Assembly: GCA_002269645.1 (NCBI GenBank)
Contig: NIVC01002303.1
Location: forward strand, 1-59,727
Source: Macrostomum lignano
Lineage: Eukaryota
Length of the DNA: 59,727 nt
Direction of reading: 5' to 3'
A program made the position numbers and the translations under genes. Under the pieces are notes generated by a model. It ran no database searches. It saw nothing but the letters and a program-made list of their open reading frames with translations, and was not told the origin of the DNA. Shown one piece after another: positions 13,425 to 19,400 of this stretch (the stretch's first letter is position 1; each line of letters begins with the position of its first letter).

Positions 13425-16400
13425 ATGCGCTTGCCACTAAAATTTCTGCTGGCAGTCGCCTGTCTGACCGCTGTCGTCTCCAACCCGGATGACGACCCGG
13501 ACGACAGGCCGGAAGTGCACATCCTCATTGCCATTTCTAAGGAAATTCCATTCTTCAACGAGGTCCATTATTTCAACTATTCGATCCGATACTTGAACAC
13601 CCGGATGGAATTGTTTCCAAGCTTCAAGCTGAGGCCCGACATTCGACTAATCAAAGGGGTACTTTGTTATTTTGTTGCGAACTTGACGTTTTTCTTGTTT
13701 TATTGCAAGAATTACTTAGTTAGTTAGTTAGTTAGTTAGTAAGTTAGTTAGCTAGTTAGTTAGTTAGCTAGTTAGTTAGTTAGTTAGTTAGTCAGTCAGT
13801 CAGTCAGTTAGTTAGCTAGTTAGTTAGTTAGTTAGTTAGTTAGTTAGTTAGTTAGTTAGTCAGTCAGTCAGTTAGTTAGTTAGTTAGTTAGTTAGTTAGT
13901 TAGTTAGTTAGTTAGTTAGTTAGTTAGTTAGTTAGTTAGTCAGTCAGTCAGTTAGTTAGCTAGTTAGTTAGTTAGTTAGTCACTTACTTAGTTAGTTAGT
14001 TAGTTAGTTAGTTAGTCAGTTAGTTAATTAGTTAGTTAGTTAGTTAGTTAGTTAGTTAGTTAGTTAGTTAGTTAGTTAGTTAGTTAGTTAGTTAGTTAGT
14101 TAGTTAGTTAGTTAGTTAGTTAGTTAGTTAGTTAGTTAGTTAGTTAGTTAGTTTAGTTAGTTAGTTAGTTAGTTAGTTAGTTAGTTAGTTAGTTAGTTAG
14201 TTAGTTAGTTAGTTAGTTAGTTAGTTAGTTAGTTAGTTAGTTAGTTAGTTAGTTAGTTAGTTAGTTAGTTAGTTAGTTAGTTAGTTAGTTAGTTAGTTAG
14301 TTAGTTAGTTAGTTAGTTAGTTAGTCAGTTTGTTTTTTTAGCTAGTTAGTTATCTAGATAAGCATCAAAAATTGATTTTGTTATAATCCCCCAGGAATTT
14401 AACAAATCAGTAGCAATATTGTTGTCTGTCAGGAAAATTTTAATACAAAGTGTATTTATGGCCCTACATGCTGGTCCATTGTTTGAATTCTAAAGCAAGG
14501 GTGGACACTATATAAAGAATCAGCGATATTGTTCTCAGCAAAAGTCAACAACTCTCAGTTGCTATGCTGAGAGCTTCAACAGCCTCAAGAGTGAATTTGA
14601 TTAATTTAAACCTTTCAGACTGATTGCTTTTCGCCATGGAAATTTGTATTACAATCAGCAGAAATTTTGTCGCCACAATTAAGTAAATGCAACGTATCTC
14701 AAATACACAATTAACAGCAGGAAGACGTTGGCGCCGCTCTGAAGGCTTTTGTTGACGGCTACCTCAGCGGCAGCAACAAGGCGCTGATGCTGGGCGCCAG
14801 CTTCTCGCAGCAGTCTCAGGTCATTGCTGAGCTGGCCCGCTACTACTGTGTGACTCAGGTGAGAGACTGTGGCTAAACTGTGTGACTCAGGTGAGAGACT
14901 GTGGCTAAACTGTGTGACTCAGGTGAGAGACTGTGGCTACTGTGTGACTCAGGTGAGAGACTGTGGCTAAACTGTGTGACTCAGGTGAGAGACTGAGGCT
15001 AAACTGTGTGACTCAGGTGAGAGACTGTAGCTAAACTGTGTGACTCAGGTGAAAGACTGTGGCTAAACTGTGTGACTCAGGTGAGAGACTGTGGCTAAAC
15101 TGTGTGACTCAGGTGAGAGACTGTGGCTAAACTGTGTGACTCAGGTGAGAGACTGTGGCTACTGTGTGACTCAAGTGAGAGACTGTGGCTACTGTGTGAC
15201 TCAGGTGAGAGACTGTGGCTAAATTGTGTGACTCAGGTGAGAGACTGTGGCTAAACTGTGTGACTCAGGTGAGAGACTGTGGCTAAGCTGTGTGACTCAG
15301 GTGAGAGACTGTGGCTACTGTGTGACTCAGATGAGAGACTGAGGCTACTGTGTGACTCAGGTGAGAGACTGTGGCTAAACTGTGTGACTCAGGTGAGAGA
15401 CTGTGGCTAAACTGTGTGACTCAGGTGAGAGACTGAGGCTAAACTGTGTGACTCAGGTGAGAGACTGTGGCTAAGCTGTGTGACTCAGGTGAGAGACTGT
15501 GGCTAAACTGTGTGACTCAGGTGAGAGACTGAGGCTACTGTGTGACTCAGGTGAGAGACTGAGGCTAAACTGTGTGACTCAGGTGAGAGACTGTGGCTAA
15601 ACTGTGTGACTCAGGTGAGAGACTGTGGCTAAACTGTGTGACTCAGGTGAGAGACTGTGGCTAAACTGTGTGACTCAGGTGAGAGACTGTGGCTAAACTG
15701 TGTGACTCAGGTGAGAGACTGTGGCTAAGCTGTGTGACTCAGGTGAGAGACTGTGGCTAAACTGTGTGACTCAGGTGAGAGACTGTGGCTAAATTGTGTG
15801 ACTCAGGTGAGAGACTGAGGCTAAACTGTGTGACTCAGGTGAGAGACTGTGGCTAAACTGTGTGACTCAGGTGAGAGACTGAGGCTACTGTGTGACTCAG
15901 GTGAGAGACTGAGGCTAAACTGTGTGACTCAGGTGAGAGACTGTGGCTAAACTGTGTGACTCAGGTGAGAGACTGTGGCTAAACTGTGTGACTCAGGTGA
16001 GAGACTGTGGCTAAACTGTGTGACTCAGGTGAGAGACTGTGGCTAAACTGTGTGACTCAGGTGAGAGACTGAGGCTAAACTGTGTGACTCAGGTGAGAGA
16101 CTGTAGCTAAACTGTGTGACTCAGGTGAAAGACTGTGGCTAAACTGTGTGACTCAGGTGAGAGACTGTGGCTAAACTGTGTGACTCAGGTGAGAGACTGT
16201 GGCTAAACTGTGTGACTCAGGTGAGAGACTGTGGCTACTGTGTGACTCAGTGAGAGACTGTGGCTACTGTGTGACTCAGGTGAGAGACTGTGGCTAAATT
16301 GTGTGACTCAGGTGAGAGACTGTGGCTAAACTGTGTGACTCAGGTGAGAGACTGTGGCTAAACTGTGTGACTCAGGTGAGAGACTGAGGCTAAACTGTGT

Positions 16401-19400
16401 GACTCAGGTGAGAGACTGTGGCTAAGCTGTGTGACTCAGGTGAGAGACTGTGGCTAAACTGTGTGACTCAGGTGAGAGACTGAGGCTACTGTGTGACTCA
16501 GGTGAGAGACTGAGGCTAAACTGTGTGACTCAGGTGAGAGACTGTGGCTAAACTGTGTGACTCAGGTGAGAGACTGTGGCTAAACTGTGTGACTCAGGTG
16601 AGAGACTGTGGCTAAACTGTGTGACTCAGGTGAGAGACTGTGGCTAAGCTGTGTGACTCAGGTGAGAGACTGTGGCTAAACTGTGTGACTCAGGTGAGAG
16701 ACTGTGGCTAAATTGTGTGACTCAGGTGAGAGACTGAGGCTAAACTGTGTGACTCAGGTGAGAGACTGTGGCTAAACTGTGTGACTCAGGTGAGAGACTG
16801 TGGCTACTGTGTGACTCAAGTGAGAGACTGTGGCTACTGTGTGACTCAGGTGAGAGACTGTGGCTAAACTGTGTGACTCAGGTGAGAGACTGTGGCTAAA
16901 CTGTGTGACTCAGGTGAGAGACTGTAGCTAAACTGTGTGACTCAGGTGAGAGACTGTGGCTAAACTGTGTGACTCAGGTGAGAGACTGTGGCTAAACTGT
17001 GTGACTCAGGTGAGAGACTGAGGCTAAACTGTGTGACTCAGGTGAGAGACTGTGGCTAAACTGTGTGACTCAGGTGAGAGACTGTGGCTAAACTGTGTGA
17101 CTCAGGTGAGAGACTGAGGCTAAACTGTGTGACTCAGGTGAGAGACTGTGGCTCAACTGTGTGACTCAGGTGAGAGACTGAGGCTAAACTGTGTGACTCA
17201 GATGAGAGACTGTGGCTAAACTGTGTGACTCAGGTGAGAGACTGTGGCTAAACTGTGTGACTCAGGTGAGAGACTGTGGCTAAACTGTGTGACTCAGGTG
17301 AGAGACTGTGGCTAAGCTGTGTGACTCAGGTGAGAGACTGTGGCTAAACTGTGTGACTCAGGTGAGAGACTGTGGCTAAACTGTGTGACTCAGGTGAGAG
17401 ACTGTGGCTAAACTGTGTGACTCAGGTAAGAGACTGTGGCTAAACTGTGTGACTCAGGTGAGAGACTGTGGCTAAACTGTGTGACTCAGGTGAGAGACTG
17501 TGGCTAAGCTGTGTGACTCAGGTGAGAGACTATGGCTAAACTGTGTGACTCAGGTGAGAGACTGTGGCTAAACTGTGTGACTCAGGTAAGAGACTGAGGC
17601 TAAACTGTGTGACTCAGGTGAGAGACTGTGGCTAAACTGTGTGACTCAGGTGAGAGACTGAGGCTAAACTGTGTGACTCAGGTGAGAGACTGTGGCTAAA
17701 CTGTGTGACTCAGGTGAGAGACTGTGGCTAAACTGTGTGACTCAGGTGAGAGACTGTGGCTAAGCTTTGTGACTCAGGTGAGAGACTGTGGCTAAACTGT
17801 GTGACTCAGGTGAGAGACTGTGGCTAAACTGTGTGACTCAGGTGAGAGACTGTGAATAAACTGTGTGACTCAGGTGAGAGACTGTGACTAAACTGTGTGA
17901 CTCAGGAGAGAGACCGTGGCTAAACTGTGTGACTCAGGTGAAAGACTGTGACTAAACTGTGTGACTCAGGTGAGAGACTGTGACTAAACTGTGTGACTCA
18001 GATGAGAGACTGTGACTAAACTGTGTGACTCAGGTGAGAGACTGTGGCTAAACTGTGTGACTGAGGTGAGAGACTGAGGCTAAACTGTGTGACTCAGGAG
18101 AGAGACTGTGGCTAAACTGTGTGACTCAGGTGAGAGCCTGTGGCTAAACTGTGTGACTCAAGTGAGAGACTGTGGCTAAACTGTGTGACTTTGTTATGAT
18201 TTAATTCCATAATTTTCAGATTGGCCTGAATCTGTCGCCGGAACTAAGCGATCGGTCGATCTACCCGTACTACACGAGAATGTCCACTACTTTTAACGTC
18301 TATGTGAAACCGTTGGTGTCAATTGTGACCAAGTTCAATTGGAAGAAGATCGGCTTTCTAGTTCAAGACTACTCCGCATTCAAATCGGTGAGTAGATATG
18401 TGCGTCATCTGTGTCACACTTGTGCAACAGATGGTGTCACTGTGGGTGACTGTGAGTCACTGTGTGTCACTGTGTGTCACTAAATGTCACTCATGCAGTC
18501 AGTGCGCGATAAAAGAATCGTTTTTTTGTTAAACGATTTCTTCCAGGTGGCCAGCGAGCTGGAGAGAGATTTCATGGCCCGCAACATCAGCTATTCCAAA
18601 CGGATGTACTTTACTGACGCCACTGCCGCTCTGACAAGCCTTCTGGTAAGTTTAATTCTCACGTCAATAGTTTTTAACATAAACAGTTTAAATTATAAAA
18701 TTATCGCAGTGAGTTTACTTATTATGATTTGCAGCAAAAGGACATTCGAATCTTCATCGCTGTTCGCTCGATCGCCGCTGAACAGTCAGATAAGCGGCTG
18801 GACTGCGTGGTAGGGCACCGAATCCACCCACACCCAAATCCAACCACACCCGAATCCACCCACACACGAATCCACCCACACCCAAATCCAACCACACCCA
18901 AATCCAACCACACCTGAATCCACCCACACCCGAATCCACCCACACCCAAATCCAACCACACCCGAATCCACCCACACCCGAATCCACCCACACCCGAATC
19001 CACCCACACCCGAATCCACCCACACCCGAATCCACCCACACCCGAATCCACCCACACCCTAATCCACCCACACCCGAATCCACCCACACTCGAATCCACC
19101 CACACCCGAATCCACCCACACCCGAATCTCCCACAACCGAATCCACCCACTCCCTAATCCACCCACACCCGAATCCACCCACACCCGAATCTCCCACACC
19201 CGTATCCACCCACTCCCTAATCCACCCACACCCGAATCCACCCACACCCGAATCTCCCACACCCGAATCTCCCACACCCGAATCTCCCAGACCCGAATCT
19301 TCCACACCCGAATCTCCCACACCCGAATCTCCCACACCCGAATCTCCCACACCCGAATCTCCCACCCCCGAATCTCCCACACTCGAATCTCTCAGACCTC

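What the first reader, a model, noticed from the sequence alone, without database searches (positions are those of the whole stretch)
14846..18190. Minisatellite built from the exon 2/intron 2 junction: ~105 tandem copies of the gene's own 5' splice site
Seen: the unit is the last 13 nt of exon 2 (CTGTGTGACTCAG) plus the first 17-19 nt of the intron (GTGAGAGACTGTGGCTAAA), so the true donor is followed by ~100 identical decoy donors in identical exonic context. The common 32-bp unit reads GTG AGA GAC TGT GGC TAA, an in-frame stop, so skipping to a later donor gives a premature stop. The rarer 30-bp unit reads [10 protein letters not shown] in frame with no stop and regenerates the exon end. Copy number is ~105 in B, ~3 in C and ~34 in D. 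Inference: array length and the order of 30- versus 32-bp units could act as a heritable dial for productive splicing/NMD or peptide insertion in the VFT. Each junction is CAG|GT, the signature of recursive-splicing ratchet points and of the tandem-duplication model of intron gain.
Basis: partly seen in the sequence, partly recalled or inferred. Interest (0 to 1): 0.88.

Follow-up and report, generated by a model that had tools for sequence, protein, structure and literature searches.

The report
Splice-donor minisatellite in flatworm receptor genes
An intron of several tandem GABA-B-like receptor genes of the flatworm Macrostomum lignano is filled by a tandem repeat that copies the gene's own exon end plus splice donor 3 to about 355 times; this kind of repeat is already known from a few human genes, but these arrays are by far the longest.

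Summary
Window 14845-18190 holds 105 tandem units (93 of 32 bp, 11 of 30 bp, one of 29 bp). Each unit is the last 13 nt of exon 2 plus the first 17-19 nt of intron 2 of a GABA-B-like class C GPCR gene of Macrostomum lignano. Paralogues C and D carry 3 and 34 units. Thirteen further gene copies in the genome carry 3 to about 355.

The exon/intron junction is real. Splicing from donor 1 gives an ungapped match to ANF_receptor and to solved GABA-B receptors, and public gene models use that join.

- Peptide insertion is excluded. All 15 arrays read from donor 1 have an in-frame stop at codon 6 after it.
- The intron was not gained by duplication, because distant paralogues have it at the same position.
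- Known recursive introns are 11-133 kb, unlike this one.
- The "dial" idea is untested.

This is a known kind: minisatellites whose first monomer spans a splice donor (human F7, IFI6, CBS, LMNB2, PDGF), where the upstream donor is the one mainly or solely used.

New here are the extreme length, recurrence (a 56-bp array at exon 11 and an independent 31-nt repeat in a distant paralogue), and an exon 2 + array block kept near-identical between otherwise diverged paralogues.

The parts
13425..25297 (+). Gene B, exons 1-12 of a GABA-B-like class C GPCR. Exons: E1 13425-13658, E2 14718-14858, E3 18220-18387, E4 18547-18645, E5 18735-18809, E6 19491-19679, E7 20741-20983, E8 22714-22777, E9 22858-22935, E10 23828-24207, E11 24295-24417, E12 24947-25297. 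E13 starts at 25688.
   Evidence: The frame is open over 715 codons and every junction is GT-AG. Pfam ANF_receptor and 7tm_3 match. GABA-B R2 9jqx_B matches at E 6.8e-74.
14718..14858 (+). Exon 2 of gene B. Its last 13-14 nt (ACTGTGTGACTCAG) are the exon-derived part of the repeat unit. The authentic donor lies at 14858|14859.
14845..18190 (+). Minisatellite B: 105 units (93 x 32 bp, 11 x 30 bp, 1 x 29 bp). The first unit spans the exon 2/intron 2 boundary.
18191..18219 (+). Unique 3' tail of intron 2 (T-rich tract, TTTAAT branch-like site, CAG acceptor). With one unit the intron would be about 58 nt.
18220..18387 (+). Exon 3 of gene B ([21 protein letters not shown]...).
30774..30880 (+). The same minisatellite in gene C, 3 units (E2 30647-30787, E3 30910-31077).
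42601..43682 (+). The same minisatellite in gene D, 34 units (E2 42474-42614, E3 43727-43894). Here the array is followed by an intron tail unrelated to the tail in B and C.
24399..24896 (+). Second donor-spanning minisatellite in gene B. The 56-bp unit is the last 19 nt of exon 11 (CAAGAGACTGTCTGAGCAG) plus 37 nt of intron 11. The same array is at 5281-7061 (gene A), 36110-37215 (C) and 46798-47857 (D).
   Evidence: The junction ...AVKRLSEQ|DMISDG is present in P0001.
25294..25485 (+). G/T-rich 7/12-nt array that overlaps the last 4 nt of exon 12 and its donor (GGT|GTGGGG).

Best explanation
This is an intronic variable-number tandem repeat of the donor-spanning type. It sits in a recently amplified cluster of GABA-B-like class C GPCR genes of Macrostomum lignano.

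Origin (inferred): a 32-nt segment made of the last 14 nt of exon 2 and the first 18 nt of an originally ~58-60-nt intron 2 was duplicated in tandem. It then expanded by slippage or unequal exchange, mostly at the 3' end of the array.

Copy number (shown): it now ranges from 3 to about 355 among near-identical gene copies.

Tolerance (inferred): such a duplication leaves exon 2, donor 1 and the acceptor intact, so it is tolerated as long as the spliceosome takes the upstream-most donor. This is what happens for the human F7 intron 7 repeat. The whole array then behaves as intron. Any use of a later donor gives a stop six codons on and probably an NMD substrate, so the decoys are at most a cost. 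There is no evidence of a tuned function.

Movement between paralogues (identity pattern shown, mechanism inferred): exon 2 plus the array has been copied, or kept identical, between paralogues whose neighbouring exons have dS of about 1.4. The edge of identity lies exactly at the 3' end of the array, so the repeats also act as recombination or conversion boundaries.
For: - Structure and copy numbers.
- Junction fixed by homology.
- Public M. lignano gene models join YYCVTQ|IGLN. P0007 is the exact product of window gene D. P0001 and P0008 are its alleles with 35 units. P0003 is C-like.
- Intron 2 is ancestral.
- B-type copies with 105, 63 and 69 units share the first ~20 units (LLsLLLLLLssLLLssLLLL) and differ in the homogeneous 3' run.
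- All arrays have a stop at codon 6 and no frame-preserving later donor.
- The decoy GT is intact in about 95% of 867 units, neither eroded nor specially conserved.
- Gene B has an intact open reading frame. dN/dS is 0.30 for B-C and 0.19 for B-D in the VFT.
- B-D nucleotide identity is 94% in E2, 53-66% in E3-E8 and 99-100% in E10-E12, and the intron 2 tail is unrelated.
- Tandem and simple repeats make up 15% of this genome.
- In gene B, 3 of 9 intronic arrays overlap a donor and none overlaps an acceptor. About one third is what random 32-56-nt duplications in 58-87-nt introns would give.
- Precedent class with use of the upstream donor.
Against: - No RNA data could be reached, so use of donor 1 rests on gene models whose basis (transcript or ab initio) I could not verify. 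An ab initio predictor would pick donor 1 anyway, because it is the only frame-preserving choice.
- With short introns, pairing across the intron might favour the donor nearest the acceptor.
- No model was found for the 5' exons of the 105-unit gene B.
- Copy numbers of the longest arrays come from a PacBio-based assembly. The many 31-nt units there look like indel errors.
Confidence: 0.65

Rival explanations
1. Heritable dial. The more decoy donors there are, the larger the share of transcripts spliced from a wrong donor and destroyed by NMD, so array length sets the productive output of each paralogue.
For: The decoys are strong donors (8 of 9) in identical context, 85-90 of them exact. No RNA structure hides them (z = +2.35). 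Every wrong choice gives a premature stop. Copy number varies about 100-fold among gene copies.
Against: In the human F7 precedent, identical pseudo-donors are functional but silent because the upstream-most site wins. Nothing here shows selection on length. The GT of decoys evolves like other unit positions. There are no RNA data.
Confidence: 0.15
2. Self-similar re-splicing. Each unit's ...CTGTGTGACTCAG can act as a 3' splice site, so removing any block of units regenerates the same exon end plus donor. The array is taken out in steps, and a wrong first choice can be repaired.
For: Every unit boundary is CAG|GT. The pyrimidine content upstream of the unit's CAG (0.47) lies inside the range of the gene's real acceptors (0.29-0.82). 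A CTAAA branch-like motif sits about 16 nt upstream.
Against: Known recursive introns are 11-133 kb with 1-6 ratchet points and segments of 2.6 kb or more. The smallest real intron in this gene is 80 nt, so at least three units would have to go at a time. No intermediates could be looked for.
Confidence: 0.1
3. The long arrays are damage. Copies with a hundred or more units are poorly or not productively spliced and are on their way to becoming pseudogenes.
For: No public gene model covering exons 1-5 of a B-type copy was found. One long-array copy (C4050) has a 2-nt insertion in exon 2.
Against: Gene B has an intact open reading frame with canonical splice sites, and B-C dN/dS is 0.30. The insertion may be an assembly error of the kind seen in gene A. 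Expansion may simply be too recent to leave traces.
Confidence: 0.08
4. Assembly artefact: the repeat is inflated or created by the long-read assembler.
For: Indel errors are visible near contig ends and in the longest arrays.
Against: Sixteen loci on eight contigs show the array at the same junction. The order of 30- and 32-bp units is shared between allelic copies.
Confidence: 0.02

Closest known systems
Human F7 intron 7 VNTR (37 bp, 5-9 copies; Borensztajn et al. 2006, PMC1557585)
   Same: The first monomer spans the exon/intron boundary, so the authentic donor is followed by identical pseudo-donors. Copy number is variable. Later donors mostly give premature stops.
   Different: F7 has 4 exon nt plus 33 intron nt and at most 9 copies. 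Here there are 13-14 exon nt, a much stronger donor, and 3 to about 355 copies. For F7, exclusive use of the upstream donor is shown by experiment; here it is not.
Human IFI6 (6-16) exon 2/intron 2 minisatellite (Turri et al. 1995, as described in PMC1557585)
   Same: A minisatellite at the exon 2/intron 2 junction that provides many splice donors (25 pseudo-sites).
   Different: [quoted passage not shown] From my own recollection, not checked here, the unit is 12 nt, so these products stay in frame and add residues. Here every first unit carries a stop, so no in-frame product is possible.
Human CBS intron 13, LMNB2 and PDGF intron 4 junction-spanning minisatellites (listed in PMC1557585)
   Same: The same architecture, with 10-20 repeats. 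Only the authentic donor, or it plus the first two pseudo-donors, is used.
   Different: Those are single-copy human genes with far fewer copies. Here a whole paralogue family carries the array, together with further arrays of the same type.
Recursive splice sites (ratchet points) of Drosophila and vertebrate long introns
   Same: A juxtaposed AG|GT that regenerates a donor after splicing.
   Different: They lie in introns of 11-133 kb with 1-6 sites and segments of kilobases. Here a site recurs every 32 nt in a 3.4-kb intron.
Intron gain by tandem duplication of an AGGT-containing exon segment (Hellsten et al. 2011, PMC3265369; potato RdRp case, PMC4974935)
   Same: Tandem duplication that includes AG|GT makes segments bounded by GT...AG whose removal restores the original message.
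   Different: Here the intron pre-exists in all paralogues and the duplicated units lie inside it. No new intron position is created.

Membership tests
Donor-spanning minisatellite (F7 IVS7 / IFI6 type) | Tandem array whose first monomer spans an exon-intron boundary | tested here: met
   Array start is 14845 and the exon 2 end is 14858. The junction is fixed by Pfam and PDB alignment across E2/E3.
Donor-spanning minisatellite (F7 IVS7 / IFI6 type) | The authentic donor sequence is reiterated in the following monomers | tested here: met
   Array B has 90 exact CAGGTGAGA and 85 exact 20-mers that include the exon context. GT is kept in about 95% of 867 units.
Donor-spanning minisatellite (F7 IVS7 / IFI6 type) | Variable copy number | tested here: met
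   Units per copy among the 16 gene copies of the assembly: 3, 3, 3, 29, 30, 34, 35, 35, 39, 42, 63, 69, 105, >186, ~250 and ~355. Polymorphism between individuals was not tested.
Donor-spanning minisatellite (F7 IVS7 / IFI6 type) | mRNA made from the upstream-most donor(s) only | tested here: inconclusive
   Public gene models P0001, P0007, P0008 and P0003 join donor 1 to exon 3, but their evidential basis is unknown. No cDNA could be reached.
Recursive splice site / ratchet point | Juxtaposed 3' and 5' splice-site motifs (AG|GT) inside an intron | tested here: met
   CAG|GTGAGA occurs at every unit boundary. The upstream pyrimidine fraction of 0.47 lies within the range of the gene's real acceptors.
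Recursive splice site / ratchet point | Lies in a very long intron that is removed in kilobase segments | tested here: not met
   This intron is 3.4 kb with 32-nt spacing. Drosophila recursive introns are 11.3-132.7 kb with segments of 2.6-63.6 kb.
Recursive splice site / ratchet point | Splicing intermediates or lariats ending at the site | not testable with these tools
   No RNA data are available.
Intron gained by tandem duplication (AGGT model) | The intron is absent from paralogues or relatives that lack the duplication | tested here: not met
   Paralogues L017-L030 (75-81% identical in exon 2) all have an intron at ...LPQ|gtgag.
Intron gained by tandem duplication (AGGT model) | The intron's 3' end repeats the upstream exon end, and the intron's 5' end repeats the downstream exon start | tested here: not met
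   The tail tttgttatgatttaattccataattttcag and the exon 3 start ATTGGC do not match ...CTGTGTGACTCAG or GTGAGAG.
Class C GPCR, GABA-B receptor-like | ANF_receptor (Venus flytrap) domain followed by a 7tm_3 domain, with best matches to GABA-B subunits | tested here: met
   PF01094 at E 3.5e-16 and PF00003 at E 3.4e-15. 9jqx_B GABA-B R2 at E 6.8e-74 over residues 82-710.

The most novel reading that the evidence does not exclude
In M. lignano the spliceosome faces up to about 355 identical strong donors in a row. Array length, either through decoy use plus NMD or through stepwise re-splicing at the regenerated CAG|GT junctions, quantitatively sets the productive output of each receptor paralogue. 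At the same time the arrays serve as recombination boundaries that move exon 2 and the 7TM exons between paralogues with diverged ligand-binding exons.
Probability: 0.12. Interest if true: 0.7.

Novelty: new member of a known kind. Interest (0 to 1): 0.4.

Why it matters
How a spliceosome picks one 5' splice site among identical ones is still debated: scanning from upstream versus proximity to the acceptor. The human models offer 5 to about 26 copies. These flatworm genes offer natural alleles with 3, 30, 100 and more than 300 copies of a strong donor in identical context. The animal can be made transgenic and has public RNA-seq, so the dose-response can be measured directly.

The locus also gives a clean example of minisatellites marking gene-conversion boundaries in a receptor family. 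It also warns annotators: several public models read through these arrays as if they were coding.

Tried and rejected
- Exact look-up of the gene model P0001 on public contigs, to find cDNA: nothing on record.
- Scan of metagenome contigs for the spliced 25-mer CTACTACTGTGTGACTCAGATTGGC: no hit. The same pattern in the animal's own genome found no processed retrocopy.
- RNA structure hiding the decoy donors: the exon end plus five units folds worse than shuffles (z = +2.35). Rejected.
- The array as coding sequence: no + strand frame of 70 aa or more is open inside the array, and the unit's TGA and TAA triplets fall in every frame over three 32-nt units. Rejected.
- Peptide insertion through 30-bp units: rejected for all 15 arrays read from donor 1.
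- Intron gain by duplication: rejected.
- Selection for or against decoy GTs: variation at the GT (1.5% and 3.7%) is within the range of other unit positions, so no signal.
- Genome-wide count of three CAGGTAAG at 15-45-nt spacing: 2268 matches against 1417 for the reversed motif. This is a 1.6-fold difference that I could not de-duplicate by array, so it says only that donor-like minisatellites are common here.
- Reading Turri et al. 1995 directly: the paper is not held.
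Full report
**What is there.** Tandem Repeats Finder reports one array at 14845-18190 with period 32, 105.3 copies and 95% matches. The same unit recurs at 30774-30880 (3.3 copies) and 42601-43682 (33.9 copies). 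Splitting array B at the repeated anchor gives 93 units of 32 bp, 11 of 30 bp and one of 29 bp. The sequence reads ...GCC CGC TAC TAC TGT GTG ACT CAG|GTGAGAGACTGTGGCTAA, then ACTGTGTGACTCAG|GTGAGAG... again and again. It ends ...ACTGTGTGAC followed by the 29-nt tail tttgttatgatttaattccataattttcag and ATTGGCCTG. Eighty-five units keep the exact 20-mer CTGTGTGACTCAGGTGAGAG and 90 keep CAGGTGAGA.

**Whose gene it is.**
- The only database relatives are Macrostomum lignano proteins. The genome behind the window has 764 Mb in 5269 contigs, matching the published Mlig_3_7 assembly of 764,424,962 bp in 5270 scaffolds. In that assembly simple and tandem repeats make up 15% and 180 Mb lie in duplicated blocks at least 95% identical.
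- I built gene B from 12 exons, all with GT-AG introns and an intact frame of 715 codons. It has an ANF_receptor domain and a 7tm_3 domain. It aligns over residues 82-710 with GABA-B receptor subunit 2 (9jqx_B, E 6.8e-74).
- That alignment runs without a gap through ...[11 protein letters not shown]|[11 protein letters not shown], so the exon really ends at the first CAG and the array is intron.
- The window holds four tandem copies of this gene: A (partial), B, C and D.

**Which donor is used.**
- I could reach no RNA data. The exact look-up of a gene model on public contigs found nothing. So did a scan for the spliced junction in metagenome contigs and in the animal's own genome, which would have revealed a retrocopy.
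- The public gene models do join donor 1 to exon 3. P0007 is the exact product of window gene D. P0001 and P0008 are products of its alleles on contigs C2002 and C2302 with 35 units. P0003 is C-like.
I cannot tell whether transcripts or a predictor produced the join, and a predictor would choose donor 1 because nothing else keeps the frame.
- The donor matches MAG|GTRAGT at 8 of 9 positions, joint best among the gene's 12 donors.
- The RNA of the exon end plus five units folds worse than shuffled versions (z = +2.35). The decoys are therefore neither weak nor hidden.

**Consequences of a wrong choice.** In all 15 arrays read from donor 1 (three in the window, twelve elsewhere), the first in-frame stop lies at codon 6 after donor 1. 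No downstream donor gives a frame-preserving insertion. The 30-bp units never sit first, except in D. There the first unit is 30 bp because of a deletion in the exon-derived part, and it still carries TAA. Peptide insertion into the Venus flytrap is therefore excluded for this assembly. Only loss of product is possible.

**Variation among copies.**
- Exon 2 has 16 close copies in the genome, each followed by the array at the same junction.
- The unit numbers are 3, 3, 3, 29, 30, 34, 35, 35, 39, 42, 63, 69, 105, more than 186, about 250 (8.0 kb) and about 355 (11.4 kb). None has a single unit.
- The three B-type copies (105, 63 and 69 units) share the order of the first ~20 units and differ in the homogeneous 32-bp run towards the 3' end. 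Growth and shrinkage are therefore recent and polar.
- Across 867 units the decoy GT is changed in 1.5% and 3.7% of units, like other positions. There is no sign of selection to destroy or to keep the decoys.
- The longest arrays contain many 31-nt units. Gene A near the contig end has many single-base indels. Exact numbers for long arrays should therefore be treated as approximate.

**Origin.**
- Paralogues only 75-81% identical in exon 2 all have an intron at the same place (...QYYYLPQ|gtgag). Intron 2 is therefore older than the array.
- The intron's tail and the start of exon 3 do not repeat the exon 2 end or the intron start. The intron-gain reading fails on both counts.
- With one unit the intron would be about 58 nt in B and 60 nt in D. 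The array-free introns of the gene are 80-89 nt.
- In introns that short, a random 32-nt tandem duplication touching the intron would span the donor in about one third of cases and the acceptor in another third.
- In gene B, 9 of 12 introns carry arrays. Three overlap the donor: intron 2; intron 11, with a 56-bp unit made of 19 exon nt plus 37 intron nt; and intron 12, with a G/T-rich 7/12-mer. None overlaps an acceptor.
- At the same donor, a distant paralogue has an independent repeat. L022 and L023 read ...gctcagtattactacctgccgcag|(gtgaggctcagtattaatttacctgccgcag)x3 gtgaggctcagtattactacac..., while their relative L027 has the unexpanded form. L028-L030 have a 23-nt array that begins about 20 nt inside the intron.
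- The frequency at donors is thus about what random placement predicts. The absence at acceptors fits a filter in which duplicated donors are harmless if the first one is used, while duplicated acceptors are not. That is inference from a small sample.

**A mosaic that ends at the array.**
- Between B and D, exon 2 is 94% identical, exons 3-8 are 53-66%, exon 9 is 76%, and exons 10-12 and intron 10 are 99-100%. The 60 nt upstream of exon 2 and the intron 2 tail after the array are unrelated.
- In the VFT exons, dS is 1.47 with dN/dS 0.19. In the 7TM exons, dS is 0.009.
- Exon 2 plus the array is therefore an island of identity whose right edge is the 3' end of the array. The second block begins at the 24-bp array of intron 9.
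- Gene conversion or unequal exchange using the arrays is the simplest account (inference).
- In D the array runs straight into a unique 60-nt intron. In B and C it ends inside an exon-derived part. This suggests that at least one of the two states is secondary.

**Comparison with what is known.**
- Borensztajn et al. [quoted passage not shown]
- Their examples are human F7 intron 7 (37 bp, 5-9 copies), IFI6/6-16 (25 pseudo-sites), CBS intron 13 (15-20 repeats), LMNB2 (10-15 repeats) and PDGF intron 4 (16-18 repeats).
- In F7 the pseudo-donors are functional but silent, because the upstream-most site is selected. In IFI6 and CBS the first two pseudo-sites are also used.
- The flatworm arrays meet three defining features of that class. 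The fourth, upstream donor use, is inconclusive.
- They do not fit known recursive splicing. Drosophila recursive introns are 11-133 kb with one to six ratchet points and segments of 2.6-64 kb.
- Even so, the unit's ...ctgtgtgactcag has a pyrimidine content (0.47) inside the range of the gene's real acceptors (0.29-0.82). Stepwise re-splicing cannot be excluded from sequence alone.
- A count of three CAGGTAAG at 15-45-nt spacing gives 2268 matches against 1417 for the reversed motif. Donor-like minisatellites are common in this repeat-rich genome, but the count is not de-duplicated.

**Verdict.** The thing is a real, extreme member of a known kind. The most likely working is a near-neutral, rapidly changing intronic VNTR that is tolerated because donor 1 is used (confidence about 0.65). 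The dial (0.15), re-splicing (0.10) and damaged-gene (0.08) readings remain open until RNA is examined. Interest is moderate. The principle is known, but the dose series of 3 to about 355 identical strong donors in a transgenic-capable animal is a good natural test bed for 5' splice-site choice.

Noticed in passing
window 24399-24896 (also 5281-7061, 36110-37215, 46798-47857): A second donor-spanning minisatellite. The 56-bp unit is the last 19 nt of exon 11 (..KRLSEQ) plus 37 nt of intron 11. Genes A, B, C and D carry 32, 9, 20 and 19 copies. A later donor would add 56 nt and shift the frame.
   Followed up: partly
window 25294-25485: A G/T-rich 7/12-nt array overlaps the last 4 nt of exon 12 and its weak donor GGT|GTGGGG, so GT-containing near-copies follow the donor at 7-nt spacing.
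   Followed up: no
L022 and L023 around position 1600-1730; L027 for the unexpanded state: A distant paralogue (78% identical in exon 2) has an independent 31-nt repeat at the same donor. The unit is gtgag plus 26 exon-derived nt, with 3 extra copies. L027 has only the 1.6-unit form. L028-L030 have a 23-nt array that starts about 20 nt inside the intron.
   Followed up: partly
window genes B (13425-25297) and D (42474-48263): Mosaic identity between paralogues. E2 is 94% identical, E3-E8 53-66%, and E10-E12 and intron 10 99-100%. The edges of identity lie at the 3' end of the intron 2 array and at the intron 9 array, which suggests gene conversion or exchange at minisatellites.
   Followed up: partly
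window 43895-43990: Gene D in the window lacks about 28 nt present in its alleles on C2002 and C2302. Exon 4 therefore reads VTCRHNVT (as in model P0007) instead of AALALHNVT (P0001).
   Followed up: partly
window 1000-2200 (gene A exons 6-7): There are many single-base indels relative to gene B in otherwise identical exons. They look like uncorrected long-read errors near the contig start rather than a true pseudogene.
   Followed up: partly
L040 (G000:C4050, exon 2 near 30460-30589): A copy with more than 186 units has a 2-nt insertion in exon 2 (GCCCGCGCTACTAC). This is either a frameshift or an assembly error.
   Followed up: no
window 22999-23813 and 20084-20670: The intronic 24-bp and 16-bp arrays are open in several frames. 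Public gene models P0002 and P0003 translate through the 16-bp array (MSRCQDV... runs), and both also carry short proline/serine-rich stretches resembling 24-bp-array frames. Both look like annotation artefacts or retained introns.
   Followed up: no
window 9637-13039 and 13712-14352: A 23-bp AT-rich array of 150 copies lies between genes A and B. A (TTAG)160 microsatellite fills intron 1 of gene B. Both recur, with other lengths, before gene C.
   Followed up: no
G000, whole genome: Three CAGGTAAG at 15-45-nt spacing occur 2268 times, against 1417 for the reversed motif. The first 100 places listed fall in roughly 30 different arrays, so minisatellites carrying donor-like motifs are widespread in this genome.
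   Followed up: no
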